DNA of 64,000 bases from Macrostomum lignano (taxonomy: Eukaryota). Below the pieces are notes generated by a model, which saw only the letters and a list, made by a program, of their open reading frames with translations, had not been told where the DNA came from and made no database searches. The translations under genes were made by a program, and so were the position numbers. Below are positions 14,658-40,257 of the stretch, piece by piece. The stretch is from NCBI GenBank assembly GCA_002269645.1, contig NIVC01000158.1, positions 784,514-848,513 of the forward strand, given 5' to 3'. Numbering within the stretch: position 1 is the stretch's first letter; every line of letters starts with the position of its first letter.

Positions 14658-14708
14658 GAGCCCTATATAATTTATATAACCTCCCCGCCACTCCAGCCAA
14701 GCTAAAAA

Positions 14709-15864
14709 ATGCTCGCCTCGCTGCGCCTCTGCAAATCTGTTGCTCGCCTTAGCCAACCAGGCCTCGGCGTGACCGCCCGCGGCTACGGCTCCGCCGCCTC
14801 CACTGCGCCTGTGCCACCCGGCTACACCAGCAAGGAGATGGAGTCTGTCATCTCCAATGGCCAACTGTCCAGCTACCCGCAGGTTGGCCGGCGCGAATGG
14901 GTCGGGCACGGCCGCGGCGGCATGCCCAACTATTTCGACTGCCTCATGTTCCCCTATCCGGCTATCCGCTTTCGCGAATGGGACAGCGCGTACGAGGCGT
15001 TGCGACAGAAGGAGAAAGGCGACTGGAAGAATCTGAGCATTGAAGACAAGAAGAAGCTGTATCGGTGAGTAGGCAGCTCAGAGATCATCAGCCCCACAGG
15101 AATCGCCCCTAGACAGCTCAGGGAGCAGCCCCAGCCCCATAGGAATCGCCCCTAGACAGCTCAGGGAGCAGCCCCAGCCCCATAGGAATCGCCCTTAGAC
15201 AGCTCAGAGATAAGCCCCATAGGAATCGCCCTTAGACAGCTCAGAGATAAGCCCCATAGGAATCGCCCTTAGACAGCTCAGAGATAAGCCCCATAGGAAT
15301 CGCCCTTAGACAGCTCAGAGATCATCAGCCCCATAGGAATCGCCCTTAGACAGCTCAGAGATAAGCCCCATAGGAATCGCCCTTAGACAGCTCAGAGATA
15401 AGCCCCATAGGAATCGCCCTTAGACAGCTCAGAGATAAGCCCCATAGGAATCGCCCTTAGACAGCTCAGAGATAAGCCCCATAGGAATCGCCCTTAGACA
15501 GCTCAGAGATAAGCCCCATAGGAATCGCCCTTAGACAGCTCAGAGATAAGCCCCATAGGAATCGCCCTAAAAAACCCGGTCAACTCCCCGTCTTCACTGC
15601 AGCCACTCCTTCCGGTACACCTTTACCGAGCTGGAGGCTCCCACCGGACGCTGGAAGCTGTCCATCGGTATTCTCATGCTAGTGTTCAGCGGCGCCTCCC
15701 TAACCATGCTCTTCATCAAGAAGGTATTCACCCCTGCCTTCCCGAAAAGCTTCGATGAAGAATGGATGATGCGCTCGATGTGGAAGCAGATCATGATCGG
15801 ATTCAATCCCGTGCAAGGCGTCAGCTCCAAGTGGGACTACGAGAACAACCGGTGGAAGGAGTAA
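14709..15864 (+). CDS. COX4: Cytochrome c oxidase subunit 4, mitochondrial
   Basis: Exons 14709-15064 and 15603-15864, GT-AG phase-2 intron, 205 aa. Mitochondrial presequence, LRQKEKGDWKNLSIEDKKKLYRHSF, one TM helix, NPVQGVSSKWDYENNRWK. AATAAA at about 15909. Confidence 0.97.
15072..15569. repeat. 37-bp minisatellite filling the COX4 intron
   Basis: Unit ATAAGCCCCATAGGAATCGCCCTTAGACAGCTCAGAG, about 13 copies. Confidence 0.97.
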
Positions 15865-17216: not shown

Positions 17217-17386
17217 TTAGTCAATTAGTCACACTAGTTAGCCACAGATGCAGTATTATTTTTGTAAGCAGAAATCGGTCTCAATTATTGAACAGCAAGC
17301 CGCATTAGTTGTTATTCCAGCAAATTCGCGAGCCCACTATCGACCTGTCAATCGCGCCGGCTCACACTCGCACACAGAAGTAGGCG

Positions 17387-20300: not shown

Positions 20301-21419
20301 TCTTGTCGTTTTTTAGGAGTCGTCTAGAGTCACTTCTTTCCTATTTTACCTGTGTAAAAGGTGTAAAACCTTTACCTGCAAAAACTCTGGGGCGACACAA
20401 GTGACTCTGGGACGCTTCTTTATGTAGCTCCTGACCTCTCAGCCTTGACACCTCAGCAATTGCCTCCCATAAGCCTCAACATCTCAAAGCCCCATTAGCC
20501 TTAACATCCCAGCAATTCCCCCAGTAAGCCTTGACATCTCAGCAATTCCCCCAGTAAGCCTTGACATCTCAGCAATTCCCCCAGTAAGCATTGATGTCTC
20601 AGCAATTCCCCCAGTAAGCCTTGACATCTCAGCAATTCCCCCAGTAAGCCTTGACATCTCAGCAATTCCCCCAGTAAGCCTTGACATCTCAGCAATTCCC
20701 CCAGTAAGCCTTGACATCTCAGCAATTCCCCCATCGCAGTAACAGTTCAGTACCACACCGCCTACCTACCTGTACTTAATACATTCCATACTCCTAATTA
20801 TGGATCTGCTATCGCTAACCATCGCAGAATATCCCCCCCCAACAGGCGAGCAATCCGCCACCTGTCAGTGGGCGGCCGGCCGGCCGACCTGAGCTCCGAC
20901 CGGCACGGCAACGTGTTGGTCAGCCTGGCCGCCAGCCGCCAGGTCAAAGTGTTCGACCCGCTGCTCACCCGCTGCCTGTACGCCTTCAACTTGGACAGCT
21001 GGTCGCCGCCGGTCGGTGCCAGCGAGGAACCGGCGACTGCAACACCAGAAGCAGCAGCTGCCGACAATCGGAACGGCGAAATCGAAATCGAAGAAGAAGA
21101 GGAGGATGAAGATGATGAAGAACAGTACATCGGCGGAGGCTGGGACTCGTCGCCGGGCTCGGCATCATCGGCCGCCTCGTCGGCATTCTCGCTGTCGGCT
21201 GCTCCGCCTCTGCCGTCGGTTGGCGAGTTTCTGTTCTCCGGCATGTCGGACGGTCGACGCCGGCGTCGATTTGTTGTCGCCGGATTTGGCGGCGGCGGCG
21301 GCGGCGGTGGCATCGGCGGTCCGGGCGACTGCCTGCAGGGCATTGCGCTGGACCCGTTGACCAGGCGGATCTTCGCCGCCGATGCGAGGCGACAGTGCCT
21401 GCTGGCCTATCAGCTGTGA
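17387..21419 (+). CDS. TRIM-NHL protein (RING finger, degenerate B-box, coiled coil, NHL repeats), about 818 aa
   Basis: Exons 17387-18370, 19121-20019 and 20846-21419 join in frame across GT-AG introns. C3HC4 RING CPVCKEIFTEPVALVACGHAFCRRC...CPVCR; B-box-like RCTDCGVASCRAHH; NHL blades IFATDSANNRVMAF, RPLGLCVDNEALYVVDSGNCRVQIF, GIALDPLTRRIFAADARRQCL. The final TGA overlaps a GTGAGT, so a further exon cannot be excluded. Confidence 0.88.
18515..19017. repeat. 35-bp minisatellite in TRIM intron 1
   Basis: Unit GATCGGCCCTCAAAACCGCTTTGAGAATGGTCTCT, about 14 copies. Confidence 0.97.
20454..20733. repeat. 30-bp minisatellite in TRIM intron 2
   Basis: Unit CAGCAATTCCCCCAGTAAGCCTTGACATCT, about 9 copies. 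Confidence 0.95.
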
Positions 21420-21532
21420 GTTGGCTGGTTAGCCTGAGGGGGGGAATTTAACGGTTTGTGTGGGATTTTTGTTGGAATATCCATCCCTATAGATTGATGT
21501 TAGTGCTATTAGCTGAACAATTAATCATCAAA

Positions 21533-21745
21533 AGAGCGGGTTGCAGCCTAGTGGCTAGAGCGTCGGACTCACGTTTGAAAGGTCCGGGGTTCGATTCTTG
21601 ATCCACGCAACTCTGGATTGTCTCAGTTCGCCCAGCTGTAAAATGGGTGCCTGGGGTAATTGAGGATGTGTGTGTGTGTGGCGACTGAACAGCTGAGCTG
21701 TCGGTTGCACACCTGCCCATTGGGTGTAATTAATAATTATTATTA
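21533..21745 (+). mobile_element. tRNA-derived CORE-like SINE (copy 2, internally deleted)
   Basis: A box TAGTGGCTAG, B box GGTTCGATTC, CAGCTGTAAAATGGGTGCC, and a (TAA)-rich tail. Matches the other copies with deletions. Confidence 0.85.
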
Positions 21746-22622
21746 CGATAAAAGACTATAGAAGAAAGCAGCTATTACTTCTTAGTGCTAGTATAGTTTG
21801 CTTTCCATTAGAGCATTGGAAATTCAGCTAGACTTGTGTATATAGTTTACTGTCTGTAATCTAGGCGCGGATTCAAATTCGATTTGTTACAACAAACTTA
21901 TACAAAACCAGCTCTATGCCTAGACTGTTTTATTCGTTATTATAATTTCTTGAGCTTTAGCCTGAAAAAGAGTATAAATTAGTCTAAAAGCTACTTCGGG
22001 GTGGAAATTTCAACATGCTGCTGAATGTTTACATTGTTTACTATCGACTTACTCTGTTGCTTGTCTTGACATTTTGTGTTGTCTATTAAATTTTAGCATT
22101 TTCTTAAAATCCCGACAAGAAACTGGCTGCTATAATGTTGAACTGTAGGCATCCATTGTAGGGTAACTTCTGTGAGTACGCGATCAGCTGATCGGTTGCA
22201 TCGCTGATTGACAGGCGCTTCCAAACAAATATTGTGCGCTGTTATTGCATTTTTGATCTGTCGTCTAGCTTTCAAAATTGCATTACTGTTAGTAATATTT
22301 TAAGGAAACAATTGGCTATAGTTACAATTAGTGTCAATTGTTTGACAAACAAATCGAAATTGTAGCTGATTTTGTTTTTAAGTAACTGTGCCGTGTAATT
22401 AAGTTCTTATTCTTTAATTTTGCTTTCCTTATTTTCATTTTTAAGCGATGAGTTTCTTCGCTTAGAAAAATCAAATATAAAAAATTAATCGCAAGCTTAG
22501 TTAAAGCTTGTAGTTTTAATTCTGTAATCAGAATGTATTACTTATTACTTATATTTGGTTGGTTTACAGAATTGCGATGCACTTAACAGTAAATTATATC
22601 CTGCTTTCTGTAGTTTATTACT

Positions 22623-24551: not shown

Positions 24552-27500
24552 CTACTGAGGTCTATGAGTGACGGGAGATTCTTCAGTCAACTCGTCCGAG
24601 CCCCGGTGGCTTGACTCTGAGCGAGCGTTAGTCGCGCCAAATACAGAGAAGTCGGTAAATTGTCGGCCGTCAGTCAGGTCAGGATCTTGTTGCTCGGGGT
24701 CGAAGGCAAAATCAGAGATCTGTGTGTTGTTATAGACAGTTTTTTGACACTGAACAGCAGCAATTTTATGACCTATAAATGTACTGCCGAAAAATCAGCC
24801 CGCCATCATTGAATCATCATTGCTTAAATAAGATGAAGCGTGTGTTGCCCCTTCTCACCTGGGTTGTCCTGATGTGGAATGGAAAATTCTTGTTGGCCAA
24901 ACTCGGCCACGTCAGAATCAGGTAGAACAGGTGAGCCAAGAACAGGCTGATGACCTCGATGAAGTTTACAACCTTGGCCCGCATGTAGTCAGGCACCTGG
25001 TTGATGTTCACGGCCACTGTGATTGGAATGGCGATGAACCACAAGCTGTAGAAGACGAGCATCGGAGTGTAGAAGACGACCTTCTTGTGCTTGGACATTG
25101 TGAAGATGCTGCAGCCCACGTAGAACAGCCAGCATGCCAGAATGACGGCCATGAGTCCGTAGCCGGGCGAGCTCTCGTATCGGTACAGCACCAGAGCTGC
25201 GTCAAAGGTCACGGCCTCGACGATGTACAGAGCAATGTAGGCGATGGCGAAATAGAACATAAATACGATTAGGCAGGTTGTGGCCCAGTGAGGCAGACGA
25301 CCGCAGACAACAGTGTAGCCCAGGCTGAGCAGCAGCAGCATGAGCACCATCAGGATCTGAGACATGGCGTACAGCACGGTGCCTTCGGGTTGATTTAAGC
25401 TTCAAGATTATCATCCATTCAAATATGCTTCTCGATAACTGTAATCAGCGGCACTGAAGTACGCGCGTACTATACATGTTCCATTCTTGAGAAATATAAT
25501 AAATAATAATTGATTACACCTGCCCCAATGGCCAGATGTGCAACCGACAGCTCAGCCGCAGCTATTGCGCGGCGCATCTGAAGGCTGCGTACGGCTGTTC
25601 AGTCCAAGGACTGGGGGTCGCCACACACAGCCTCAATTACCCCAGCTAATGCTGGCACCCATTTTACAGCTGGGTGAACTGAAGCAATGCAGAGTTAAGT
25701 GTCTTGCTCAATTAAGGACACAAATTGTTCCAGTGGGATCGAGAATCGAACCTCCGACCTTCAAGTCGTGAGTCCGACGCTCTAATCACTAGGGCTAGGC
25801 TACAACCTCCTTGAGCAATTACGAGTAATAGAAATTCAATTCAAGCTCACCAAACAGCTTTAGTCCCGAGTTTTCCTGCCCACTCAGGCCGTAGTTCAAA
25901 TAGGAGATGCAGGTAAACACGATTGACATAAAGAATAAAGAAACAGACGACAAAAATATTTTGTATGTCGCGTGGAACATTTGGTTGCTGGCCAACTTCA
26001 CTGGAATCGGAATGAAACGGGCTTCTGAGTAGCAATGCAACTATGGTATCAATGCAAAAAGTTTTAGGCACCGTCGACTGTCACTCACCCGAAACTACAA
26101 CCACCAAGATAACCATGAGGAATTCAATGAAGAAAAATGCCATGTTAAATTCCAATATATCTGCAGATTATAACCGTACGGGTATTAGAATCCTAGATCG
26201 CTTATAAAATATTGTTTGCATTTGATTTTAGCTTACAGATTTCATCGGCGGAAAAGTGTTCTCTGAAGATCTGTCCCGGATTACCGTTTCTCATGAACAC
26301 GTCGTACTCCAGATACAGTCCCTGAAATCACGGTTGCGGATGCAGCCAGACCAACAGTAAATTCCTGGCCTAATTGAAAACTATAGTACTTTATACTTCT
26401 AGCAAATATTTTTAGATATCAACAAAATGTGCCACTCAGAATCAATATGATTTTACAACAGAATTTTCAAGCTTGCATAGATCGATATTTCTGCTTTAAC
26501 TTCCTACTCCACTATTCACTGTCAAAAAGTCAGCAGCAAAGTCAGTCCCGCTACATCCTGGATTGTGTAGCATGCAGTTCCGCTAAATCCTGGATTGTGT
26601 AGCATGCAGTTCCGCTACTTCCTGGATTGTGTAGCATGCAGTTCCGCTAAATCCTGGATTGTGTAGCACGCAGTTCCGCTAAATCCAGGATTGTGTAGCA
26701 CACAGTGCCGCTACATCCTGGATTGTGTAGCACACAGTTCCGCTACATCCTGGATTGTGTAGCACGCAGTGCCGCTAAATCCAGGATTGTGTAGCACGCA
26801 GTTCCGCTAAATCGATTGTGTAGCACGCAGTTCCGCTACATCCTGGATTGTGTAGCACGCAGTTCCGCTACATCCTGGATCTGGATTGTGTAGTACACAG
26901 TTCCGCTACATCCTGGATCTGGATTGTGTAGTACACAGTTCCGCTACATCCTGGATCTGGATTGTGTAGTACACAGTGCCGCTAAATCCTGGATTGTGTA
27001 GCACGCAGTTCCGCTACATCCTGGATTGTGTAGCACGCAGTGCCGCTAAATCCAGGATTGTGTAGCACGCAGTTCCGCTAAATCGATTGTGTAGCACGCA
27101 GTTCCGCTAAATCCAGGATTGTGTAGCACACAGTGCCGCTACATCCTGGATTGTGTAGCACGCAGTGCCGCTAAATCCTGGATTGTGTAGCACGCAGTTC
27201 CGCTACATCCTGGATTGTGTAGCACGCAGTTCCGCTACATCCTGGATCTGGATTGTGTAGTACACAGTTCCGCTACATCCTGGATCTGGATTGTGTAGTA
27301 CACAGTTCCGCTACATCCTGGATCTGGATTGTGTAGTACACAGTGCCGCTAAATCCTGGATTGTGTAGCACGCAGTTCCGCTACATCCTGGATTGTGTAG
27401 CACGCAGTTCCGCTACATCCTGGATCTGGATTGTGTAGTACACAGTTCCGCTAAATCCTGGATCTGGATTGTGTAGTACACAGTTCCGCTACATCCTGGA

Positions 27501-28838
27501 TCTAGATTGTGTAGTACACAGTTCCGCTAAATCCTGGATCTGGATTGTGTAGTAAACAGTTCCGCTACATCCTGGATCTAGATTGTGTAGTACACAGTTC
27601 CGCTACATCCTGGATCTGGATTGTGTAGTACACAGTTCCGCTACATCCTGGATCTAGATTGTGTAGTACACAGTTCCGCTACATCCTGGATCTGGATTGT
27701 GTAGTACACAGTTCCGCTAAATCCTGGATCTGGATTGTGTAGTACACAGTTCCGCTACATCCTGGATCTAGATTGTGTAGTACACAGTTCCGCTACATCC
27801 TGGATCTGGATTGTGTAGTACACAGTTCCGCTACATCCTGGATCTGGATTGTGTAGTACACAGTTCCGCTACATCCTGGATCTGGATTGTGTAGCACACC
27901 AGCGCCGCTACATCCTGGAGCGCAGCATGCAGCTGAAAGAAGTTTTTTACCCATGCCGCAGCTGGTGGCTCTAACCATCAGGCGGAATCTCATTTCCGTT
28001 TACCACGTCGTTTAAGATTTGAATGGATAGATTTGAATGGATATTATATGGGTTAATACCCGTATAATATTTTGCTACGTACTAACATTCTTTCCTAGGC
28101 AATTAGAGATCGCCATGAACCACCAGCGCTCTCTAGACGATGAGAATGGATAGTTTCGAGAGTTGCACGTGACGGAGTCATTGCCGCTGTAGACGCAGGT
28201 GCCATAGTCAGGATCTAGACGGAATATCTGGTAGCTGTTGACGTCTAACAGGGACTCCTTTTGGGCGCATGTCTGCATTGATATAAAGGCCAGATATTTC
28301 TGCGCGAAAGGATTAAAATAGTAAAATTGATATTTATGACAAGCGCATACCATGCTGTCATTGTTGTAGACCATCGACCACAAATTGGGCTTGTCCCAGT
28401 ACAATAGCAGGCTTTGAACCATAAACTTCTAAAATTCAGGTGCAAAATTTATCTAATAATATTCAATTCGATGCATTGTAACATTACTGATAGGATTTTT
28501 TCCATCAATAAGTTAATAGTTAAATTGTCACCCTTGGATATCGAAAGTTAAATTGCAGAATTCCTGCTGTTGGTAGAAAGCAGAATCTATCAAGAAATAT
28601 CCAGTCCTAAAATTGAGTTAAGAAATGTCTTTCAGAGCTTTTAGTATGTTGCAAGGCCGGGTATAAAATGGTTTGTCAGTCGAATTTTCGGCTTCTACTT
28701 TATTTGTTCATGACTAAAGGTTTATAAAATCTGCTTATTCACCTTTTCAGTTTTCAGGACTCCACTGATACGTTTTCCACTCGCAACCGCTGCAGCTGAT
28801 AATAAAGCCAAAAAAGAAAAGATTCGTTTACAATCCAT
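24552..28838 (-). CDS. TMEM145: TMEM145/GPR180-family 7TM protein, paralog A (477 aa)
   Basis: Nine exons: 28838-28743, 28606-28532, 28428-28351, 28272-28087, 26321-26237, 26160-26089, 26000-25851, 25382-24859, 24719-24552. All introns are GT-AG and the frame is continuous (1434 nt). Signal peptide, then DWIFLDRFCF, RERWWFMAISNC, EHFSADE, ANKNFPFHIRTTQI, which match TMEM145. Confidence 0.92.
25505..25811 (-). mobile_element. tRNA-derived CORE-like SINE (copy 3, near full length) in TMEM145-A intron 7
   Basis: Reverse complement shows the A/B boxes, the CORE-like segment and the same 3' end as copy 1. Confidence 0.9.
26548..27918. repeat. 32/38-bp minisatellite in TMEM145-A intron 4
   Basis: Unit TCCGCTACATCCTGGATTGTGTAGCACGCAGT; a variant with an extra GGATCT dominates the right half. 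Confidence 0.97.
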
Positions 28839-30855
28839 TTTGGCTATGCATGTATTGGTTGACTATAGCATACATGTAGGCTGTCTAACGAGTACGAGTT
28901 AGTAAGTTCGTTTAAATACGTGAATTTTTTGTTAAAACAAATTTCCAATTTCAGTTTTTCTATATAATATTTGTTACATTTGCTACTAAAATTTAATATT
29001 TCTAATAAAAAACGATTATTGTCTCGTTTCGCAAAAGATATTTTAAAAAGAAACAATTTTAGCTCGCAAATTTTGTTATACTTCCTTAAGAAAACAAATT
29101 TAATCCGTAAAGAAAATCTTAAAAGAAATCGTATGGCGTGGCTCTGGAAAAAATATAAATGAAAATATGTTGAAATCGTGGCCTAACTCAGTGCCTTATA
29201 CGGCGAGTTAACTTCACTCGAGTTAACAGCAGGAACGAGAATACTGATACAGTCAAATGGAGTTGCTGGTCGATGCCAAAAGTACTTCGTAGAGTTTTAT
29301 TTTGGAAAGTTCTATTACTTCATAATTTGTCACCTCCCCGTTGGGGGCTAAGATTACTAGTTCAATCCAACTATACTAAATATCCATAAAAACCTATTCT
29401 GTTTGTAGAATCGCAGTAATACTGAATTTTTGCCACATATAACTGCAGCCACACCCCGTGCATGTATTTCTGCCCAAGCTCCGACCTGCGGCTCTATCGC
29501 TGTCCCAACAAGGTGAAATGTACGAGCTAACTCAATTTAAGGGGGGGCTGTACACTAACTGCGGGCCCAACACTGCTTAACTTGCATAGTCAAAAAAGAA
29601 ACACTACATAGTTTTCGGGTATTTTTTTCCTTCGTTTATTAAGGATGAGTCAGCAGTAAAGTACATGTAATATAATAGTAAGTATGTATTTAAATAAAAC
29701 CGTTCGCATTCGCAACTACGAACTTGCGTAAAACTTCTATATTTAGATTGGGACAGCCACAAATTGTGTAAAATGAATGTTGAAGTTTTTTGTTAAAAAT
29801 AATATAAAATTCGATAGATGAGATCACAAATACTTTAACAACAAGATTGCCTAAAGCTGCCTGCCATGTACATTCTCAGCGGCGCTGGCCAATGTACATT
29901 AACGGCTGCGCCAATAGCAAGCTGTTTACGGGATGCAGGCCACTCCAACTGCCTTTATTTTTATAATATAGCTGACACATACTTCCTTACTACTGAACTG
30001 AAAGTAGTCGAAGTGGCTCCCTGTTTACTACATAGTGTATACGAGCCTGCATCTGTAAAATGAGACAAAAAAGAGCTAAAATATCAAATTTCAGCTGAAC
30101 ATAAAAAACTGTGTGGAGTCGGAAGTGACACATCGTGGGAGACTGATCGTGAGTACCGGAAGTCAGGAAAAGGGAAGAGATTCAGAAGCATAGCATAAAA
30201 TTAATAATTTCTCAGTTTTAAAAGCTATTCGTATTCTTGGAAGCAAAATCGTACAGAATATTATTTTTAAAATTACCATGAAAAGCAATTTATAAACAGA
30301 TAAATGACAGATAAAACAGCTGATACATCAAAAACTGCTAAATGTCATTGGAAGGTCCGCATCAATTCTTGACGGAAGAGTCTCTCACACAATAACGTTG
30401 GTACTTTTGTACCGAAATTGAAGCCATCTTTGCTTCATTATCAATTAACGAAAAGCTGGAGTAAAATAGCAGATATAAAAAAGGTTTTTGACAAAAATTA
30501 TTTTGGGGTAAACAAAAGTCGAATTTAAAACTCAACTTGAGTAGGCCAAATAATTAGTCCGCAACACTGTCAGCGTAAGGTTTGAATAAATTTAACAATT
30601 GCTCTGGAGATATTTTAGCTCAGATTTGAGTGCAACCAGCCATATGACAGCGACTCTGCAGTGAGCCATCAGCTGACTACAGCAGCAGGAATTGGAATTG
30701 GCTACATACCATGTAAGTCGATGTTCCATTATCACTTGTTTTCACAGACTTTTAGCACTGACGTAATCAACTAGGTTAAATTTTTATAGCAAGTTGGATG
30801 TCCAATTCTAGGCATGGCTTGTCTCTCAGTCAGAAATTTGCGTATTGTCTGTTGC

Positions 30856-31136
30856 CCAACCTATCCAACCTATGTCTATGCCCCATCTATGGCCCAACCT
30901 GTCCATATTATGTCTATGGCCTAACCTGTCCAATTATGTCTATGATCCAACCTGTCCATATTATGTCTATGGCCTAACCTGTCCATATTATGTCTATGAT
31001 CCAACCTGTCCATATTATGTCTATGGCCTAACCTGTCCATATTATGTCTATGATCCAACCTGTATATTATGTCTATGGCCCAACCTGTCCATATTATGTC
31101 TATGATCCAACCTGTATATTATGTCTATGGCCCAAC
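30856..31136. repeat. 27-bp minisatellite with alternating variants (54-bp dimer)
   Basis: AACCTGTCCATATTATGTCTATGGCCT alternates with ...TATGATCC. Confidence 0.93.
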
Positions 31137-31585
31137 GTGCCTTTGTTTTTAGTCTTTAAGCTTTAAATGTCCGTTTTCTAACTAGGCAGACTTAATTAAA
31201 TTTGAAGTGCAGCTCTACAGTTTTAGTCTATGGCTAAAGTTCATTCATACAGATTGGAGTTTGTACTCAATCACGGAGCCAATATACTTGACAATTTCTT
31301 CACACAAAATCGTACTAAGGGGTTGTCAATCTAAGTTTTGGAATATAGCCAGCCTTTTGCGAGCTATCTAAGAAAAGCTGTTAGTTTAAGTCTCTGAATA
31401 GGCTCGCTCATTTTTTATGGTTTCCCGGTGTTTCCCTGTCTGCTCTCTTCTCTCTGCTGGTCACTATGTCTGGCTCTTTACCCAGCTTTTCTTCACTACG
31501 AGATCTGCGACCGAGTGCTGCTGAGAGCAGTTGTTCAATTTTTTCCAACGCCTAGATCACCTGCTTTTACAGGCAGGATTCAGCC

Positions 31586-34500
31586 TCAGATTGGTGGCAG
31601 CGTACCGCCGCGACCAGCGCCGCCGCCACCCAGCGGCCCCCCGCGCATCCAGTCAGGTGGCTGCGCAGCGTCGGCCTCTCTGTCGGACGCAGAAGCGTCG
31701 TCATCAGTCAGTGGCGGCTGCTGCAGCGACGAAGTCTCACTCTGAACGTTGTCATGCTGATCTTCGTTAGAAGCCGCCGCCGCAACCGGACGGTCCTCGG
31801 TGTCCGCCCCGTCCGCGATGTCGTACGAGTTGAAATTTAATCCGGCGTCGTTCTCAACCAGCCGGGCTGCCCTGGAGACGCTTCCAGCCGGCGAGGCGGA
31901 CTCAGAAACGGTATCGGCGGCGACTGGCGTCGGCAGCATGACGCCTGAGTCCCAGTCACTGTCGCCGCTTCCGCCGACGCCGTCAGCGCCACCAAAACCA
32001 AACCCTGTGCTTGCAGCAGCAGCAGAAACCGCTGGGACATAACTCTGACGCTGGTCTGGCACCGTGAAGATGGAGAAGTCCGTGAACTGGCGTCCGTCTG
32101 CGAGGTCGCCGGATTCCTTGTTGGCCTCTGACTCCTCTTTGTCCGCCATCTGTGTGGCCACTTCGAAACTGATGACGTCGATCTGTAAAGAATATTGGTG
32201 CATAATTGAGTTATTGGAGCATTTTGATTTTTCAAATCGAAGGCTTTGGGTTTTTATTTCAATTTGGTTCATAACACGTTAAACATCTAGCTAGGGCAGC
32301 GCATCTACCGTGTTGAGGGCAGAGCATCCTACGGTGTTGAGGGCAGAGCATCCTACGGTGTTGAGGGCAGAGCATCCTACGGTGTTGAGGGCAGAGCATC
32401 CTACGGTGTTGAGGGCAGCGCATCTACCGTGTTGAGGGCAGAGCATCCTACGGTGTTGAGGGCAGAGCATCCTACGGTGTTGAGGGCAGCGCATCTACCG
32501 TGTTGAGGGCAGAGCATCCTACGGTGTTGAGGGCAGAGCATCCTACGGTGTTGAGGGCGGAGCATCCTATGGTGTTGAGGGCAGAGCATCCTATGGTGTT
32601 GAGGGCAGAGCATCCTACGGTGTTGAGGGCAGAGCATCCTATGGTGTTGAGGGCAGAGCATCCTACGGTGTTGAGGGCAGAGCATCCTATGGTGTTGAGG
32701 GCAGAGCATCCTACGGTTTTGAGGGCAGAGCAACCTACGGGTGTTGAGGGCAGAGCATCCTACGGTGTTGAGGGCAGAGCATCCTACGGTGTTGAGGGCA
32801 GAGCATCCTACGGTGTTGAGGGCAGAGCATCTTACGGTGTTGAGGGCAGAGCATCCTACGGTGTTGAGGGCAGAGCATCCTACGGTGTTTAGGGCAGAGC
32901 ATCCTATGGTGTTGAGGGCAGAGCATCCTACGGTGTTGAGGGCAGAGCATCCTACGGTGTTGAGGGCAGAGCATCCTACGGTGTTGAGGGCAGAGCATCC
33001 TACGGTGTTGAGGGCAGAGCATCCTACGGTGTTGAGGGCAGAGCATCCTACGGTGTTGAGGGCAGAGCATCCTACACGGTGTTGAGGGCAGAGCATCCTA
33101 CGGTGTTGAGGGCAGAGCATCCTACGGTGTTGAGGACAGGGTAACTGGCACCCTTTTAAACTTGACAGGGAGACACTAGGTTACAGATTCACGACAGATG
33201 TTCGCATTCTCAAAATTTGCACTATAATTACCGCCAGAATCAGCAGCCTAATGGAAATCGTTATGTCAGAAAGTAGAAAGAGCCCGACCAAGCTGAAGCG
33301 GCTATAAAGTGTGCTCTGGACGACTAGCCAAACTACGAGTATAGCCCTTAATTGTCGCGCTTTGCATTTAAAATTCCGATTTACCCCGAGCCTGACTACG
33401 TGGAAATGTATAGTTTAGAAGAGAGCAAGCTGAGCAATAGCTACTTGGAAAACCAGTGAGCAGACAAACACACATTCATTGCACTGTCTGACGCAGACTG
33501 GGACAATGGGCCTTAAGCCTTAAGTGAGCTCAGCTCAAAGACCCAGACTTAGACTCGGACTCTCTGGTATGGGGTAGAGAAAAAAAATTTGTTCAAACAA
33601 AGCAGAGTGCAGAATCCAAAATTTCGAGAGAACAGAAATAGAGAATTGAAAAGGCAGGAGAGTCTAAAGCAGGCCTCAGACGGTTTAAGCACAGCTACTA
33701 AGTGAATTTCTAAACACCATGTAGTTCCTTTCAGAAATTTGCTTTTAACGCAATTTACACTGTAAATGAGGCACTCACCTGGGTTGTCCTGATGTGGAAT
33801 GGAAAATTCTTGTTGGCCAAACTCGGCCACGTCAGAATCAGGTAGAACAGGTGAGCCAAGAACAGGCTGATGACCTCGATGAAGTTTACAACCTTGGCCC
33901 GCATGTAGTCAGGCACCTGGTTGATGTTCACGGCCACTGTGATTGGAATGGCGATGAACCACAAGCTGTAGAAGACGAGCATCGGAGTGTAGAAGACGAC
34001 CTTCTTCTTGTGCTTGGACATTGTGAAGATGCTGCAGCCCACGTAGAACAGCCAGCATGCCAGAATGACGGCCATGAGTCCGTAGCCGGGCGAGCTCTCG
34101 TATCGGTACAGCACCAGAGCTGCGTCAAAGGTCACGGCCTCGACGATGTACAGAGCGATGTAGGCGATGGAAAAGGAGGTCATAAATACGGACAGGCAGA
34201 TGGCGCCCCAGTGAGGCAGACGACCGCAGACAACAGTGTAGCCAAGGCTGAGCAGCAGCAGCATGAGCACCATCAGGATCTGAGAGATCGCGTACATCCC
34301 GGTGCCTTCGGGGCGATTGAGTGTAGGAGTGGGCTTTTAGAGTAGAAAACTTCTAAGTAGAGCGGAGAACAGACCACTTCAGGTGTACTAGGGAAGAGTG
34401 AGCCGAGAGCAGAACACTTCAGGTGTACTAGGGAAGAGTGAGCCGAGAGCAGAACACTTCAGGTGTACTAGGGAAGAGTGAGCCGAGAGCAGAACACTTC

Positions 34501-36617
34501 AGGTGTACTAGGGAAGAGTGAGCCGAGAGCAGAACACTTCAGGTGTACTAGGGAAGAGTGAGCCGAGAGCAGAACACTTCAGGTGTACTAGGGAAGAGTG
34601 AGCCGAGAGCAGAACACTTCAGGTGTACTAGGGAAGAGTGAGCCGAGAGCAGAACACTTCAGGTGTACTAGGGAAGAGTGAGCCGAGAGCAGACCACTTC
34701 AGGTGTATTAGGGAAGAGTGAGCGGAGAGCAGACCACTTCAGGTGTATTAGGGAAGAGTGAGCGGAGAGCAGACCACTTCAGGTGTATTAGGGAAGAGTG
34801 AGCGGAGAGCAGACCACTTCAGGTGTATTAGGGAAGAGTGAGCGGAGAGCAGACCACTTCAGGTGTATTAGGGAAGAGTGAGCGGAGAGCAGACCACTTC
34901 AGGTGTATTAGGGAAGAGTGAGCGGAGAGCAGACCACTTCAGGTGTATTAGGGAAGAGTGAGCCGAGAGCAGACCACTTCTCTTTCAATTTACTCACCAA
35001 GGTTTTTGAGCCCGGAATTTTCGTAGCCGAATGACGCATAGCTCAGGTAGGCACTGCAGGTCACGATGATTGAGGCAAAGAAGAATACCACAGATGACAG
35101 GAAGATCTTGTAGGTCGAATGAAACATCTGAATGTCGGCTAGTTTGACTGAAAGGAAATGTTTAAGGTGACATATTGATTGACTCTACAAGAACGATATG
35201 AATTCTATTTTACTTTACTCACCGCTCACGACTATGACAAGAATCATCATGACCAGTTCAACGAAGAACGCAGCGATGTTAAACTCCAGAATGTCTGCGG
35301 AAGAAGGGGATTGAAAATAAAAAAAGCATCACAAATCGTAAAAATTACACTAAAGGTCGGTTTTTTGACTGCAAAGTGCACTATCAGCTATCACGGTAGG
35401 AAGTTATCGGATTTTCTACTAATAAATTGGCAATAGTTGCATCACTGAGACCAGATCACCATTAAATAATTAAAAACATTAACAACAGTTTTTTGGCTTA
35501 CACAGCTCATCAGCGGAGAAGTGCTCACGGAAGAACTCGCCCGGTTCTCCATTCCGCATGACAACATCGTAGCGCAGATAGAGGCCCTGGTTAAAGTTGA
35601 AGTTTTTAATGCTATTTTCAATGTTAATTTGATTTCTATGTGACTCAGCGGGCTATGGGATTTTTTTCTCACAATCTTTGATGCGCAGTTTGAGATGGCG
35701 AGGTACCACCAGCGCTCTCGGGCCGATATAAACCGGATACGCTCAGTCTTGCACACAATTGTGCCATTCTCCATGTTGCACATTGACAGGCTCGTGTTTA
35801 AGCGGAATATCTGATTGCTTTTAACGTCTAGCAGGCCCTCTTTTTGCTCGCAGGTCTGCCATTGTTTTACGAAATTATTTGTTAGAATTCATAAAGAAAT
35901 TGCAATGTAATTGGATGTGATGCTGTACATTTGCTTGCATTTTTCTTACCATGCTTTTGTTAGTATAAGCAGATTTCCATAGGTTTGGCTTGTCCCAGTA
36001 GAGAAGAAGGCTTTGTGTCTTGAATCCCTGCAGTTAATATGAATTATTTAGAGTAAAACAGTTGCAAGACACTGTTTATTCAAACAGCAATACAATCTCT
36101 CTCTTACCCTGGGGTATTTAAATTCAAATTGTAATGTTCCATCTTTGTTAAGGAAGCAGAATCTAGTCAAAAATTTCCAATTCTAAAATTAATGTAGGTG
36201 ATATTTAGGAATGATCATGCTTTTGTGCAGCAAATATTTCAAAATTTACTTTTCTTTGCACAAATTTTTAAAGAAACAATTTTTTTGGCAGTTTTTCTTG
36301 AAATTTGACAATTTTCCGAGATATGAATGCATAAATATGTAATGCTTTTTAAAGAAGTTATTTGCCACGAATAGAAAGTCCTGTATTTCTTTAAAGTAGA
36401 CCTGGATGTAACTATTTATTGGATAGTTTACTTCAATATATAATAAATCATAAAATTTTACATTGTCTACCGCAGAAAAAAACATAGCTTCTTTTTTCTT
36501 ATAAAAACTTACAACGTCTCCAGAAAGCGTTCCAGACACTCTCTTTCCCTGAACCAAGCCAGTGGAAAAAATAAATCCAGCGCTAAAAAGAACAATATAT
36601 ACAAGGCATGGACGCAT
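31586..36617 (-). CDS. TMEM145: TMEM145/GPR180-family 7TM protein, paralog B (623 aa)
   Basis: Nine exons: 36617-36513, 36182-36108, 36027-35950, 35855-35673, 35586-35502, 35294-35223, 35147-34998, 34305-33779, 32182-31586. Same intron positions and phases as paralog A, 1872 nt open frame. Motifs NWKFLTRFCF, RERWWYLAISNC, NKNFPFHIRTTQI. Confidence 0.92.
32293..33135. repeat. 24-bp minisatellite in TMEM145-B intron 8
   Basis: Unit CCTACGGTGTTGAGGGCAGAGCAT, about 35 copies. Confidence 0.97.
34371..34980. repeat. 40-bp minisatellite in TMEM145-B intron 7
   Basis: Unit GAACACTTCAGGTGTACTAGGGAAGAGTGAGCCGAGAGCA; two homogeneous variant blocks, about 15 copies. Confidence 0.97.
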
Positions 36618-38272
36618 TTTTATATTTAAGCTTTAAGTCACTTCCACTTAAGGTTGATAAAATTTATACTTCCATAAAAATCGCTTTTGGCTCAATATAA
36701 TTTTTTATTTCTTTGTAGCTGATTAAAGCACACCAGGCTCAGGTAATTATTTCGTGTATAATAGAGTAATACTTGTCTCAGATTGTACTTGTCTGAAATA
36801 AATACTAACTAAAAAAGTAATCCGAAAATCGTAGCTAGATGTCAACCTCTAATGTAAACAATCAAGAGAGTTAAGTGTAATTATTCTTTTTAGGACATAA
36901 CACAGATAAAAAATATGAATATGCTGGGAAAAAACCAATCGAGATTGATCATTATCTGACGAGCAATATATTTGTTTTAATTACTCCCTCAAGAAAAAAT
37001 TCGAAGTCCCCGAGAGCAATTTGTTTCCAAAATTGTCCCAGATTTTATACACTTCCCTTCAATTCAATTTCCGTAGGGGCCTTAATTGAGATTTTAAAAG
37101 CAGAAAATTGTAACGTTCCTGAATCCTGAATAGCATATTCCTAAATAACAGGAAATTGAAAGTAGAATGGAAACATGTGGGATGTTATAGTTTGCTGCTA
37201 ATTTGAAATGGCTGGATTATTCCTTTTGCGGCCTAGTTGCTACTGCAAGCTTTCAATTTAATCATAGATGCAGAAATCAGGCTTGAGAGACTGAAAATTT
37301 TCTGTCTATGGACGGCACTCGTTGACATAAGGAAGTTCAATTTAATCCTGGGGGAATCAAAATTTGATTATTCTATGGTATTCGTGTACATTTTTACTAA
37401 TCATCTTAACTGGTTATAACATCTGGACACGTCGGACTCAAGGTCGCAGCTTAAGGGGCAAGAAGGCTAGACGTAAATTTCACACGCAACATGGAGTGCA
37501 GGTGAATGTCGTGCAAGCAATTACGAGCGTACACCTAAGCTCGGCCTTGTAGCTCGTACATCATATATAAATCCTCGGAGAGACTATGACGGCAGCCAGG
37601 TTCCAGCGTTCATCAATGATCTGGTGCAAAGCGTGACGAGTCGTGGTGATGTACATGTACAGGTGAACCAGGTGTGGCAGCCATCTGCAGTACAATTACA
37701 AGTCGCTGCAATTGTGCGCAAGCAAAGGCTGCGAGGGGTCGCAACTCCCAGTACACTGTGTACATCCATCCCAGGCTCCAGCTCAGAGCTGCTACTATAC
37801 CCTACCAGTGTACAGGTATGGGTTGAGCTCAGCTTAATCTGCTTTGAGAGAGGATGTGACACAATCATACCGCAATCATATTCAGCTGCGTACTAACCGC
37901 GTCCAGTTCTAATTACAATAACTTGCAGCGCCGGCTGTGAATGCGCCGTTGGCTTGCGACCCCCACCCCCAAATACTTGTAGTTATTATAGTATAGCTCT
38001 GACTTCAGATTCTGCGACGGACCAATAAAATCTCCGGACCAGGAAATTATTATAAAGAGACGATGGGCAGGCATACAGGTATAGCAGGAGGTGGCTTCAT
38101 CTCTCACAACCGAGACGGAACTTCTACAGGTTTCAACTGCACAGAAGTCTGTAAAGTAAGAAGGAAAGCTGCTGTTTATATCGGAGGCTACTAAACTGGC
38201 AAAGAAAACACAGGCTCAACCAAACAGAAATTGCTTGGCAGCAGAAGCAGAAATAAACAAACAGACGGCAGC

Positions 38273-39460
38273 ATGTTCGAGGGCGCCTTCCTTCGCCGCG
38301 ACTTTCCTTGGCACAGCAATGCCTGCGCGCCGCTCCGCCAACTGCTGGAGCTGAATAGCAGCGCCGAAGGCGGCCTGGCAGACCAGTCCTGCAACCAGAA
38401 TGACGTCCGCATGTCGGCGGTGTTCCTGCCGGTCAGCCTGCTCGGCCTGGCGCTCAGCTCGCTCAGCACGGCGCTGTTCCTGTGCCAGAAGCAGCGCACG
38501 GCATTCCGGGCCAGCCAGCTGAGCCTGTCGCTGGTGATGAGCCTCTACCTGCTGTTCTCGGCGGTGGATTTCATTAACGTACTGGCCGGCGCCTGCCTGT
38601 ACTGGAGCCAGCCAAGCCGGCACGTCCAGGTGATGATCGGGGCGCTCGCCTGTCTGCTTGTGGACGCGCTGCTCTGCTTGCGCAACTGGTGCACGGCGTT
38701 TATCGCAGCTCAACGCGCCGAAGCGGTGGCTTTCCCGTTGCGACCGAGAAAACTGCTGGACAGACGGAACTTCCGCATCAGCCTGCTGACGGCGGCGCTG
38801 GCGCTCTGTCTGCCGCTGTCGCTGGTCCGCTCTCTGGCCGAGGCGATGGTCGTCTGCTACGGAGGCGAGGCCGTGGCCCTAGCGAGCGTTGGCTACCCGC
38901 TGCCGGCTTCAGCGAAGCGGGATCCCAGCCACCAGCGCCACTACAACTACCTGCTGCAGTCCCGCTGGTTCGAACCATTCGAAGTTTACGTGTTCTTCTC
39001 TGTGCAGACTGTGCTGCCCGTGATTGGCGTTGTCTGCATGTCGCTGTCGATGGCCGTCGCCATGCTGCGCCGGCGGGGAGGTCAAGCGGGGACGCCGGCG
39101 CTGCAGCCGCAGGTGTGCAAGAGGAACAAGGCCCGTGCCAGTCGCACCGTGCTGAGCCTGGCGATGATCTTCACTCTGCTGCAGGCGCCCGTCTTTGTCG
39201 GCACCCTGCTCCGGCACGCCGGCGCTTTCGATGTCGAATCGACATTCGGCAAACATTTCCAGTTCATTGCTGAGCTGTGCTTGCTGTTGGACTCCATTTT
39301 CAATACGTTCGTCTACGCCTACTTTGTGCCGGATTTTCGACGCTTCTTTCGTCGGCTGCTGCGTCGAGACGGCGAGAGGCGAGGGCTGCCTATGCTGCCG
39401 CCGATGCCGACGCCTCCGTCGCCGACGCGAATGCGTCATCTGATAGGCGAGGGCGAGTGA
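38273..39460 (+). CDS. Intronless rhodopsin-class GPCR, peptide/FMRFamide-receptor-like, 395 aa
   Basis: First ATG at 38273 in the 38231 ORF. Seven hydrophobic segments; AVDF in TM2, QRAEAVAFP at the TM3 end, LPVIGV in TM5, LLQAP in TM6, DSIFNTFVY in TM7, helix 8 PDFRRFFRRLL. Confidence 0.9.
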   Translation: MFEGAFLRRDFPWHSNACAPLRQLLELNSSAEGGLADQSCNQNDVRMSAVFLPVSLLGLALSSLSTALFLCQKQRTAFRASQLSLSLVMSLYLLFSAVDFINVLAGACLYWSQPSRHVQVMIGALACLLVDALLCLRNWCTAFIAAQRAEAVAFPLRPRKLLDRRNFRISLLTAALALCLPLSLVRSLAEAMVVCYGGEAVALASVGYPLPASAKRDPSHQRHYNYLLQSRWFEPFEVYVFFSVQTVLPVIGVVCMSLSMAVAMLRRRGGQAGTPALQPQVCKRNKARASRTVLSLAMIFTLLQAPVFVGTLLRHAGAFDVESTFGKHFQFIAELCLLLDSIFNTFVYAYFVPDFRRFFRRLLRRDGERRGLPMLPPMPTPPSPTRMRHLIGEGE

Positions 39461-39504: not shown

Positions 39505-39769
39505 TGGGTATTTATTGTGTAGCAGCTATTGCGCGGCGCATCTGAAGGTTGCGTACGGCTGTTCAGTCCAAGGACTGGGGGTCCCCACACAGCCTCAATT
39601 ACCCCAGCTAATGCTGGCACCCATTTTACAGCTGGGTGAACTGAATCAATGCAGAGTTAAGTGTCTTGCTCAAAAGACACAAATTGTTCCGAGTAGGTCG
39701 AGAATCGAACCCCCGACCTTTCTTTATCATGAGTCCGACACTCTAACCACCACTAGACTACAACCCCTG
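39505..39769 (-). mobile_element. tRNA-derived CORE-like SINE (copy 4) just 3' of the GPCR
   Basis: Near-identical to 25505-25811 apart from a shortened 3' end. Confidence 0.9.
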
Positions 39770-40257
39770 CTGTTACAACGATAATGTACTTACCTATGTA
39801 CCTCTCAGCACAAGTTATAAAACTACTTTCTTTATTGTAATCATAGCTTTATTAGTAGTTTGTGTCGCTTTTGAGCAAAGGCTTGTTAAAAAATATATAT
39901 TAGTTTAAGCTTAAGAAGCCGCCTTGCAATCACGAGTAGCTGTCGCACTGCTTGAATCATAATTATCTCGTACACAGCTAAGTCAGGTCTTCAGTTCAAG
40001 GTCATATTCTCTGTCGCATGCCCACTGAAACCTTACTTAATAGGTAATCTCTGATGAGATCTCAGGCTTGTCTTGGTGATTTTGTGACCTGCAATTTTTA
40101 ATTTCGATAGAACGTAGCAATTGTGATAATTCTCATCATGGTAACTAACTGCTGGCGTAGCCACACTATGGCGACAATAGGAATAGGTGTGTGCCTCACC
40201 TCAAACTGTTCAGAAATATGAAGGAGTGGATCATTATTTTTCTACCCTATATGACAT

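What the first reader, a model, noticed from the sequence alone, without database searches (positions are those of the whole stretch)
24859..34305. Apparent gene conversion of the transmembrane exon between old tandem TMEM145 paralogs
The luminal exons are well diverged: exon 2 is 16/25 and exon 3 is 18/26 identical in amino acids, synonymous sites differ widely, and the introns are unalignable. In contrast, 24859-25247 and 33779-34170 are identical except for one 3-nt indel (KHKK vs KHKKK) and one synonymous change over about 390 nt. Identity stops at the splice donor. A short patch escapes it (TTCLIVFMFYFA vs AICLSVFMTSFS), and high identity then resumes toward the acceptor. Purifying selection cannot conserve synonymous sites this way. 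The result is a receptor-like pair with a shared 7TM core but different ectodomains and tails.
Basis: partly seen in the sequence, partly recalled or inferred. Interest (0 to 1): 0.72.

Follow-up and report, generated by a model that had tools for sequence, protein, structure and literature searches.

The report
Exon-limited gene conversion between flatworm TMEM145 paralogs
Two old, neighbouring copies of a TMEM145-type membrane protein gene in the flatworm Macrostomum lignano have had their one long exon (most of helix 3 to helix 7) copied from one gene onto the other, a clean but textbook case of gene conversion between tandem duplicates.

Summary

- **Source.** The window is Macrostomum lignano assembly Mlig_3_7, contig NIVC01000158.1.
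- **Genes.** It holds two head-to-tail, nine-exon TMEM145-family genes on the minus strand. Gene A is 477 aa (24552-28838) and gene B is 623 aa (31586-36617).
- **Old duplication.** In exons 2-7 synonymous sites are saturated (pS 0.83, dN 0.30), and the introns do not align.
- **Exon 8.** It is 524/527 nt long. Its last 378 nt are identical between A and B apart from one lost Lys codon in A.
- **Chance.** Permutation gave 0 of 10,000. A null that keeps the exon's codon bias gives P about 1e-34.
- **Related flatworm.** A transcript from a related flatworm groups with B in exons 2-7 (bootstrap 100%). In exon 8, A and B group together against it (100%). The duplication is therefore older than that species split, and exon 8 evolved in concert.
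- **Escaping patch.** A 36-50 nt patch at the start of helix 4 stays paralog-specific.
- **Replication.** A second homeologous copy of the locus shows the same mosaic.
- **Mechanism.** Non-crossover interlocus conversion, probably confined to exon 8 because it is the only long stretch of homology.
- **Correction.** The shared core is helices 3-7, not all seven.

This is a new example of a known kind, of modest interest.

The parts
24552..28838 (-). Gene A, TMEM145-family, 477 aa, 9 exons. Exons: e1 28743-28838, e2 28532-28606, e3 28351-28428, e4 28087-28272, e5 26237-26321, e6 26089-26160, e7 25851-26000, e8 24859-25382, e9 24552-24719 (stop included).
   Evidence: All introns are GT-AG, with the same phases as gene B. 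The model matches the annotated homeolog PAA82873.1 (P0002) apart from 3 residues and 1 Lys. Pfam: PF21892 E=3e-38 and PF10192 E=8e-36.
31586..36617 (-). Gene B, TMEM145-family, 623 aa, 9 exons. Exons: e1 36513-36617, e2 36108-36182, e3 35950-36027, e4 35673-35855, e5 35502-35586, e6 35223-35294, e7 34998-35147, e8 33779-34305, e9 31586-32182 (stop included).
   Evidence: My spliced model is identical to the NCBI protein BOX15_Mlig031667g1 (P0158). Pfam: PF21892 E=7e-41 and PF10192 E=3e-33.
24859..25233 (-). Most recently homogenised tract in gene A: exon 8 nt 150 to the end, encoding the second half of helix 4 through helix 7 and the NKNFPFHIRTTQ end.
   Evidence: No substitutions against gene B over 375 aligned nt; one Lys codon is missing.
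33779..34156 (-). Most recently homogenised tract in gene B (exon 8 nt 150-527).
   Evidence: Same as the gene A tract. It is also identical in the third homeolog, L005.
25081..25086 (-). (AAG)2 Lys run in gene A. Gene B has (AAG)3 at 34001-34009.
   Evidence: Only the window's gene A lacks the codon. The homeolog's A and all B copies have three. A protein model from the older ML2 assembly (P0156) also reads KHKK.
25248..25283 (-). Patch in gene A that escapes homogenisation (exon 8 nt 100-135; residues ATTCLIVFMFYFA, start of helix 4). One more synonymous difference lies at nt 149.
   Evidence: 13 of 36 nt differ from gene B. The related-species B orthologue agrees with B at 11 of the 14 diagnostic sites in nt 100-149, with A at 2, and with neither at 1.
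34171..34206 (-). The corresponding patch in gene B (GAICLSVFMTSFS).
   Evidence: It is 11/13 aa identical to the foreign B orthologue and 6/13 to gene A.
25284..25382 (-). 5' segment of exon 8 in gene A (nt 1-99, most of helix 3). It is homogenised but less completely. The counterpart in gene B is 34207-34305.
   Evidence: 94/99 nt identical between A and B. The 5 differences are fixed in both homeologs and show no paralog-specific agreement with the foreign orthologue.
25383..25850 (-). Intron 7 of gene A. It cannot be aligned with intron 7 of gene B (34306-34997), carries a SINE-like repeat at about 25510-25811, and bounds the tract on its 5' side.
   Evidence: The self-blastn finds no positional intron match. 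In gene B, intron 7 is mostly a 40-bp minisatellite at 34360-34980.

Best explanation
**What it is (shown).**
- Genes A and B are tandem, head-to-tail duplicates of a TMEM145-type gene. The protein has a GOLD-like luminal domain and seven membrane helices.
- They separated long ago, before Macrostomum lignano split from the related flatworm sampled in SRA runs SRR28338163/4.
- Since that split, their 524/527-nt exon 8 has been overwritten by non-crossover interlocus (ectopic) gene conversion: one copy served as the repair template for the other.
- The outcome is a mosaic: nt 1-99 are 95% identical, nt 100-149 are still paralog-specific, and nt 150-527 are identical.
- The 3' tract is no more diverged than the three subgenomes of this neopolyploid are from each other (0-0.8% against about 1-2%).

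**How it most likely works (inferred).**
- Conversion stops at the exon borders because the introns share no homology.
- Exon 8 is converted and the other exons are not because it is the only long shared stretch. The other exons that align end to end are 72-186 nt (exon 9 shares only a roughly 40-nt motif), likely too short to support homologous repair. Each conversion also restores the homology that the next one needs.
- The different identity of the 5' and 3' segments could mean more than one event.
- The patch at the start of helix 4 either was never included or is kept distinct by selection.
- The direction of transfer cannot be told from these data.
- Functionally, the two proteins keep one common helix 4b-7 core, while the GOLD domain, helices 1-2, the helix-4 patch and the tails differ.
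For: **Gene models and family.** Both genes have nine exons with GT-AG introns and matching phases. Gene B equals the NCBI protein P0158, and gene A matches its homeolog P0002. Both carry TMEM145_N and GPR180-TMEM145_TM.

**Age of the duplication.**
- Exons 2-7 have pS 0.83 and dN 0.30.
- The introns are unalignable.
- Synonymous codons differ within the conserved exon-9 motif.

**The tract.**
- dS is 0.059 for exon 8 overall.
- The last 126 codons carry no substitutions.
- Fourfold sites are 57/57 identical, against 11/39 in exons 2-7.
- No run of 375 nt appeared in 10,000 permutations.

**Not synonymous constraint.** The foreign B orthologue shares only 86 of 133 same-residue codons with B in exon 8, where 76 are expected from codon bias alone. 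A and B share 120 of 121 (log10 P = -34).

**Tree conflict.**
- Exons 2-7 give clade (wB, lB, X_B) at 100%. Exon 8 gives clade (wA, lA, wB, lB) at 100%.
- A is not a long branch: its identity to outgroups matches B's.
- pS(B,X) = 0.70 is below pS(A,B) = 0.83.

**Replication.** Homeolog L003 (94.6-98% identical in flanking DNA) shows the same mosaic with its own private differences.

**Non-crossover.** Exons 1-7 and exon 9 on both sides of the tract stay paralog-specific in each gene.
Against: - No raw reads were examined. The assembly was polished with Pilon using multi-mapping Illumina and RNA-seq reads, and 93% of read pairs map to several loci in this genome. A few true differences inside the tract could have been erased.
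- No A orthologue from another species was found. The species test therefore has three taxa, not four, and the direction of transfer is unknown.
- A GC-bias signature is not demonstrated. Exon 8 has the highest GC3 (0.80-0.81), but so does the foreign orthologue (0.86), and GC3 rises from 5' to 3' along the gene.
- All substitutions in the 3' tract lie on one branch (lB). Nothing requires conversion after the subgenomes split, so 'ongoing' is not shown.
- The case for two events rests on 5/99 vs 0/375 differences, and three of those five are non-synonymous.
Confidence: 0.9

Rival explanations
1. Assembly or polishing artefact. Short genomic or RNA-seq reads from one paralog, or Canu read correction, overwrote the other paralog's exon 8. 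RNA-seq polishing would naturally stop at exon borders.
For: Mlig_3_7 is a Canu PacBio assembly polished with Pilon, using Bowtie2-mapped Illumina reads and STAR-mapped RNA-seq reads. 93% of read pairs map to multiple loci.
Against: - A read can only mis-map if the two exons are already nearly identical. Polishing cannot turn the roughly 63% identity seen in the other exons into 100%.
- Closely spaced real differences survived polishing: the patch, five 5' differences, the Lys indel and lB's three private changes.
- A second homeologous locus shows the same mosaic with different private variants.
- Protein models from the independent ML2 assembly reproduce both A alleles of exon 8 (P0156, P0157).
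- Both genes lie about 8.9 kb apart on one contig, each with unique introns on either side.
Confidence: 0.04
2. No transfer took place. Exon 8 is identical because its synonymous sites are under very strong constraint, from extreme codon bias, an overlapping RNA or regulatory element, or an antisense ORF.
For: - Exon 8 has the highest GC3 (0.80-0.81).
- Its pS against the foreign orthologue (0.44) is lower than in other exons (0.70).
- Long antisense ORFs exist at 24874-25272 and 33794-34345.
Against: - Against the foreign orthologue, codon identity in exon 8 is 65%, close to the 57% expected from codon bias alone. Synonymous sites in this exon are therefore free to change, yet A and B share 120/121 codons.
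- No Rfam family matches anywhere in the window.
- Constraint would not produce a tree that groups by species.
Confidence: 0.01
3. Unequal crossing-over, or a recent partial duplication, produced a chimeric gene. This would be a crossover or a segmental copy rather than non-crossover conversion.
For: Tandem head-to-tail paralogs with a shared 0.5-kb segment are substrates for unequal exchange. Minisatellite-rich introns also change length between homeologs.
Against: A single crossover within exon 8 would leave one flank of a gene carrying the other paralog's exons. Here exons 1-7 upstream and exon 9 downstream are paralog-specific in both genes, in both homeologs, and the copy number is two. 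A segmental copy would carry intron sequence with it, but identity ends within 5-10 nt of the exon borders.
Confidence: 0.03

Closest known systems
TLR1/TLR6 in mammals: gene conversion that limits the divergence of tandem paralogs (Kruithof et al. 2007, PMC2077338)
   Same: Tandem paralogous membrane receptors-like proteins. The N-terminal ectodomain groups by orthologue, while a C-terminal block including the membrane-spanning part groups by paralog within a species. Conversion keeps a common core while the other domains diversify.
   Different: - The TLR genes have a single coding exon and a tract of roughly 300 aa with similar limits in nine species. Here the tract is bounded by intron non-homology and covers one exon.
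- Recurrence across species is shown for TLR1/6 and not here.
- This case has an internal patch that escapes conversion.
SIGLEC11/SIGLEC16 and the CEACAM families: domain-restricted conversion in paired receptors (PMC5701461 and PMC7042247, listed; I read only their abstracts)
   Same: Exon- or domain-limited concerted evolution between neighbouring paralogs, with selection invoked for the regions that escape.
   Different: In those families the ligand-binding ectodomain is homogenised and the signalling tails differ. Here the ectodomain diverges and the membrane core is homogenised.
Interlocus gene conversion giving mosaic divergence in tandem paralogs (HMA4 model, bioRxiv 10.1101/2025.10.29.685298, listed; I read only the abstract)
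   Same: Tandem copies whose divergence is a mosaic set by conversion and selection.
   Different: That work concerns recently duplicated plant metal-pump genes. Here the duplicates are old (saturated dS) and only one exon remains convertible.
[quoted passage not shown]
   Same: Same two Pfam domains and the same predicted architecture: signal peptide, beta-sandwich, seven helices. In mouse, the GOLD domain binds luminal cargo (stereocilin) and the 7TM region binds a cytosolic partner (tubby). That division of labour fits a shared core with different ectodomains.
   Different: Identity to named TMEM145 proteins is 33-42%. M. lignano has at least four to five family members (A, B, P0159, P0152, P0160). 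No function is known in flatworms.

Membership tests
TMEM145 (GOST family: GOLD-domain seven-transmembrane proteins) | N-terminal TMEM145-type GOLD-like beta-sandwich domain | tested here: met
   PF21892 TMEM145_N covers profile positions 1-131 of 131, with E=3e-38 (A) and 7e-41 (B). The AlphaFold2 model of the A homeolog has a beta-sandwich at residues 22-156 with pLDDT above 89.
TMEM145 (GOST family: GOLD-domain seven-transmembrane proteins) | GPR180/TMEM145-type seven-helix membrane domain | tested here: met
   PF10192 covers profile positions 1-223 of 224, with E=8e-36 (A) and 3e-33 (B). There are seven predicted helices at 175-405 and seven hydropathy peaks.
TMEM145 (GOST family: GOLD-domain seven-transmembrane proteins) | Overall fold shared with a solved GOST member | tested here: met
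   The four best Foldseek PDB matches are human TMEM87A (8htt, 8kb4, 8hsi, 8ctj). E is 6e-9 to 1e-7, 423-444 columns are aligned, and TM-score is 0.52-0.69. Ordinary GPCRs follow only at E>=6e-3.
TMEM145 (GOST family: GOLD-domain seven-transmembrane proteins) | Closer to TMEM145 than to GPR180 or other GOST branches | tested here: inconclusive
   The named hits are overwhelmingly 'transmembrane protein 145(-like)' at 33-42% identity; some UniRef names read 'Intimal thickness related receptor IRP domain', the GPR180-type label. The TMEM145-specific N-domain model matches. No explicit tree with GPR180 sequences was built.
TMEM145 (GOST family: GOLD-domain seven-transmembrane proteins) | Cargo-binding or secretion function as in mouse TMEM145 | not testable with these tools
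   The only source is the literature on mouse (PMC12789471).
Interlocus (ectopic) gene conversion between paralogs | The paralogs are much older than the identical tract | tested here: met
   In exons 2-7, pS is 0.83 (saturated), against dS 0.059 for exon 8 and 0 for its last 126 codons. The introns are unalignable.
Interlocus (ectopic) gene conversion between paralogs | A contiguous run of identity, including silent sites, longer than chance or codon bias allows | tested here: met
   Run of 375 nt, 0 of 10,000 permutations. Under a codon-bias null, log10 P = -34.
Interlocus (ectopic) gene conversion between paralogs | Phylogenetic conflict: the tract groups by genome, the flanks group by paralog | tested here: met
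   Rooted neighbour-joining trees with 300 bootstraps gave 100% for (B, foreign B) in exons 2-7 and 100% for (A, B) in exon 8. Only one foreign species is available, and only its B copy.
Interlocus (ectopic) gene conversion between paralogs | Both flanks keep their own identity (non-crossover) | tested here: met
   Exons 1-7 and exon 9 are paralog-specific in both genes and in both homeologs.
Interlocus (ectopic) gene conversion between paralogs | GC-biased outcome in the converted tract | tested here: inconclusive
   Exon 8 has GC3 of 0.80-0.81, the highest of all exons. The foreign orthologue also reaches 0.86, and GC3 rises 5' to 3' along the gene.
Interlocus (ectopic) gene conversion between paralogs | The sequence is real at read level | not testable with these tools
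   No reads are available. The indirect support is a second homeolog and protein models from the ML2 assembly.

The most novel reading that the evidence does not exclude
The mosaic is kept by selection rather than being a by-product of homology length. On this reading, repeated conversion holds helices 4b-7 of A and B identical because both must fit one shared partner on the cytosolic or membrane side (in mouse TMEM145 the 7TM region binds tubby). Selection would also block conversion of the helix-4 patch and of the GOLD domain, which would set each paralog's cargo or pairing specificity. The process would run in parallel in all three subgenomes of a neopolyploid.
Probability: 0.2. Interest if true: 0.45.

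Novelty: new member of a known kind. Interest (0 to 1): 0.3.

Why it matters
**For evolution.** It is a tidy, well-bounded example of how a single long exon can stay convertible, and so evolve in concert, long after the rest of a tandem gene pair has diverged past recognition. It also contains an internal patch that resists. It sits in a neopolyploid with three subgenomes, where up to six copies of the exon coexist.

**For the M. lignano community.** It is a practical warning. Reads, RNAi triggers, in situ probes or CRISPR guides placed in exon 8 cannot tell A from B, or one homeolog from another. Gene trees built on the whole protein will understate the age of the duplication. Gene A appears not to be annotated on this contig.

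**For TMEM145 biology.** It suggests which part of the protein tolerates no divergence between paralogs (helices 4b-7) and which parts carry specificity (the GOLD domain, helices 1-2, the start of helix 4 and the tail).

Tried and rejected
1. The first protein search, with exon 8 alone, returned only an unrelated metagenome fragment, P0001. The exhaustive representative search was needed to reach the M. lignano proteins.
2. A phmmer search of PDB sequences with exon 8 found nothing.
3. Exact look-ups of the two exon-8 ORFs as prokaryote-style gene calls found nothing.
4. The metagenome scan gave one short, distant contig, L001, which was not used.
6. No A orthologue from another species appeared among 126 hits. 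The four-taxon test and the direction of transfer could therefore not be addressed.
7. GC-biased conversion: considered and left inconclusive.
8. I asked whether lB's three private synonymous changes (exon nt 161, 170, 197) are old B-type states, which would mark a different tract boundary in that homeolog. They cluster at the tract's 5' edge; (48/378)^3 is about 0.002, computed after the fact. The foreign orthologue does not share them, so new mutations on that branch explain them equally well.
9. Rfam and tRNA scans of the window found nothing.
10. A mutually exclusive exon pair within one gene was rejected. All nine exons are duplicated in order, each set with its own start codon, signal peptide and stop.

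Full report
**1.

The two stretches are visibly the same in the raw sequence. A blastn of the window against itself finds one substantial match between the two gene regions: 24854-25389 vs 33774-34312, 95.9% over 539 nt. The only other hit is a weak 61-nt match in exon 4. Everything else in that comparison is minisatellite or SINE-like repeat.

**2. Gene models**

On the minus strand I built two nine-exon genes. Every intron is GT-AG, and the intron phases are the same in both genes.
- Gene A spans 24552-28838 and encodes 477 aa. Gene B spans 31586-36617 and encodes 623 aa.
- Each has its own ATG, a hydrophobic signal-like N-terminus and a stop codon.
- The B model is identical to NCBI protein BOX15_Mlig031667g1.
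- The A model matches PAA82873.1, which is encoded at a homeologous locus, apart from three residues and one Lys.
- Both proteins carry full-length TMEM145_N (E=3e-38 and 7e-41) and GPR180-TMEM145_TM (E=8e-36 and 3e-33).
- Most named database relatives are called 'transmembrane protein 145(-like)', at 33-42% identity.
- An AlphaFold2 model (mean pLDDT 84.9) shows a beta-sandwich at residues 22-156 and seven helices at 175-405.
- Its only strong PDB matches are human TMEM87A, the solved GOST-family member (E=6e-9, TM-score up to 0.69).

**3. Source of the window**

Locus L004 from assembly GCA_002269645.1 (Macrostomum lignano Mlig_3_7, contig NIVC01000158.1) is 100% identical to window 21586-46617.

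The DV1 line genome is a neopolyploid with three subgenomes. These differ by about 2.2% genome-wide and 1.1% in coding sequence (PMC10733133). I recovered two further copies of the locus:
- L003 (NIVC01000445.1), with both genes, 94.6-98% identical to the window.
- L005 (NIVC01005011.1), with gene B only.

**4. Divergence by exon (Nei-Gojobori)**

| Region | pS | dS | dN |
|---|---|---|---|
| Exons 2-7 | 0.83 | undefined (saturated) | 0.30 |
| Exon 8, whole | 0.057 | 0.059 | 0.031 |

- Fourfold-degenerate sites are 11/39 identical in exons 2-7, 18/20 in the first 33 codons of exon 8 and 57/57 in its 3' part.
- The longest identical run, 375 nt, was never approached in 10,000 column shuffles, whose maximum was 49.
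- Exon 9 shares only the motif DL[TA]DGRQFTDFS[VI]F, and its synonymous positions differ.
- Identity ends 5 nt into intron 8 and about 10 nt into intron 7.

**5. Why this is neither constraint nor codon bias**

Logan assemblies of SRA runs SRR28338163/4 contain a transcript, L002 (protein P0151, 627 aa). It is the B orthologue of a related, unnamed flatworm.
- Against M. lignano B, it has pS 0.70 and dN 0.187 in exons 2-7. Against A, it has pS 0.80 and dN 0.293.
- It shares B's long tail.
- In exon 8 it shares 86 of 133 same-residue codons with B. Codon bias alone predicts 76, so silent sites in this exon are nearly saturated between species.
- A and B, by contrast, share 120 of 121 such codons (log10 P = -34).

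**6. Per-exon trees**

The trees were rooted with three further M. lignano paralogs and TMEM145 proteins of other animals.
- Exons 2-7 give (wB, lB, foreign B) with 100% bootstrap.
- Exon 8 gives (wA, lA, wB, lB) with 100%, excluding the foreign B.
- A is not a long branch: its identity to every outgroup equals B's.

The duplication therefore predates that species split, and exon 8 has evolved in concert since.

**7. Anatomy of the mosaic**

| Exon 8 nt | A vs B | Notes |
|---|---|---|
| 1-99 | 94/99 identical | The 5 differences are fixed in both homeologs and show no paralog-specific agreement with the foreign sequence |
| 100-149 | 36/50 identical | The foreign B agrees with B at 11 of 14 diagnostic sites and with A at 2, so this patch (start of helix 4) has stayed paralog-specific |
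| 150-527 | identical | See below |

For nt 150-527:
- wA, lA, wB and hB are identical, except that wA has lost one AAG from an (AAG)3 run.
- lB carries three private synonymous changes at nt 161, 170 and 197.
- Those three cluster at the tract's 5' edge. That could mean a different tract boundary in that homeolog, but the foreign sequence does not share them, so new mutations explain them as well.

The different identity of the 5' and 3' segments (5/99 vs 0/375) could mean more than one event. However, three of the five differences are non-synonymous, so this is not proven.

**8. Mechanism**

Because exons 1-7 and exon 9 stay paralog-specific in both genes, the transfer was a non-crossover conversion, not an unequal crossover.

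The following points are inference from general knowledge of homologous repair, not tested here:
- The tract ends at the exon borders because the introns offer no homology.
- Exon 8 is the only exon converted because it alone offers about 0.5 kb of homology. The other exons that align end to end are 72-186 nt, and exon 9 shares only a roughly 40-nt motif.

The direction of transfer is unknown.

**9. Artefact check**

Mlig_3_7 is a Canu PacBio assembly polished with Pilon, using multi-mapping Illumina and RNA-seq reads. That could erase a few isolated differences between already near-identical sequences. It cannot create identity from the roughly 63% seen in neighbouring exons, and many closely spaced differences survived it.

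A second homeolog shows the same pattern with its own variants. Protein models from the independent ML2 assembly reproduce both A alleles (P0156 with KHKK, P0157 with KHKKK). Read-level proof is still missing.

**10. Comparison and verdict**

The closest described case is TLR1/TLR6 (PMC2077338). There, tandem receptor paralogs have orthologue-like ectodomains, and a C-terminal block including the membrane segment is kept alike by conversion.
- The phenomenon is well known. I found no report of it for TMEM145-family genes or for Macrostomum.
- In mouse TMEM145, the GOLD domain binds luminal stereocilin and the 7TM region binds cytosolic tubby (PMC12789471). A shared core with divergent ectodomains is therefore functionally plausible, but nothing is known in flatworms.
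It is a new member of a known kind and of modest interest.

Noticed in passing
window 1-64000: The window is unusually rich in tandem repeats. There are some 27 separate arrays with units of 4-40 bp, several over 1 kb (for example 53649-55090, 58040-59547, 2390-3419). Many lie inside introns of the two genes. This fits the 15% simple and tandem repeat content reported for this genome.
   Followed up: partly
window 26543-27919, 32293-33139; L003 10762-11417, 2532-6414: Intron lengths differ strongly between homeologs. Intron 4 of gene A is 1765 nt in the window and 656 nt in L003. Intron 8 of gene B is 1596 nt in the window and 3883 nt in L003. Both introns hold minisatellites (38-bp and 24-bp units), which probably account for the difference. 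The exons are 97-100% identical.
   Followed up: partly
window 24552-28838 (= L004 about 17780-22066): Gene A is intact here, but it is not among the genes listed for this contig (only B is listed for L004). Its homeolog on NIVC01000445.1 is annotated (PAA82873.1). This is probably an annotation gap.
   Followed up: partly
window 14400-14650, 21560-21730, 25510-25811, 39515-39770: Four copies of a roughly 250-300 bp dispersed repeat, 80-90% alike. It looked to me like a tRNA-derived SINE, but ARAGORN and Rfam find no tRNA. One copy sits in intron 7 of gene A, next to the converted exon.
   Followed up: no
window 56871-57620 (-): A single open frame encodes a SIX-class homeobox protein: SIX1_SD E=6e-46 and Homeodomain E=5e-13.
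   Followed up: partly
window 38195-39457 (+): A 421-aa open frame about 1.6 kb upstream of gene B on the opposite strand. It is rich in long hydrophobic stretches and receptor-like by eye, but it matches no Pfam family.
   Followed up: partly
window 17384-18388 (+) and on to about 21400; L003 16416-21091: A RING-finger gene. The homeolog is annotated as an 817-aa protein with RING and weak NHL hits, so it is TRIM-like. It lies downstream of gene A on the opposite strand, in the GC-richest part of the window.
   Followed up: partly
window 14706-15065 (+): An open frame with a cytochrome c oxidase subunit IV domain (PF02936, E=4e-14).
   Followed up: no
exon 8 of both genes and L002 768-1294: Exon 8 has much lower apparent synonymous divergence between species than the other exons (pS 0.44 vs 0.70). 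This is almost fully explained by strong GC3 and codon bias in this exon (86 identical codons observed vs 76 expected). GC3 rises steadily from exon 1 (about 0.3) to exon 8 (0.8-0.86) in both species.
   Followed up: yes
L002, L006 (Logan transcripts): In the related flatworm, the B transcript assembled full-length through exon 8 from short reads. This hints that no expressed paralog shares a long identical tract with it there. No A orthologue was found in the protein collection.
   Followed up: no
M. lignano proteins P0159, P0152, P0160: M. lignano has at least three further TMEM145-family paralogs, 44-52% identical to A, encoded at least partly on other contigs. The family is expanded in this flatworm.
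   Followed up: partly
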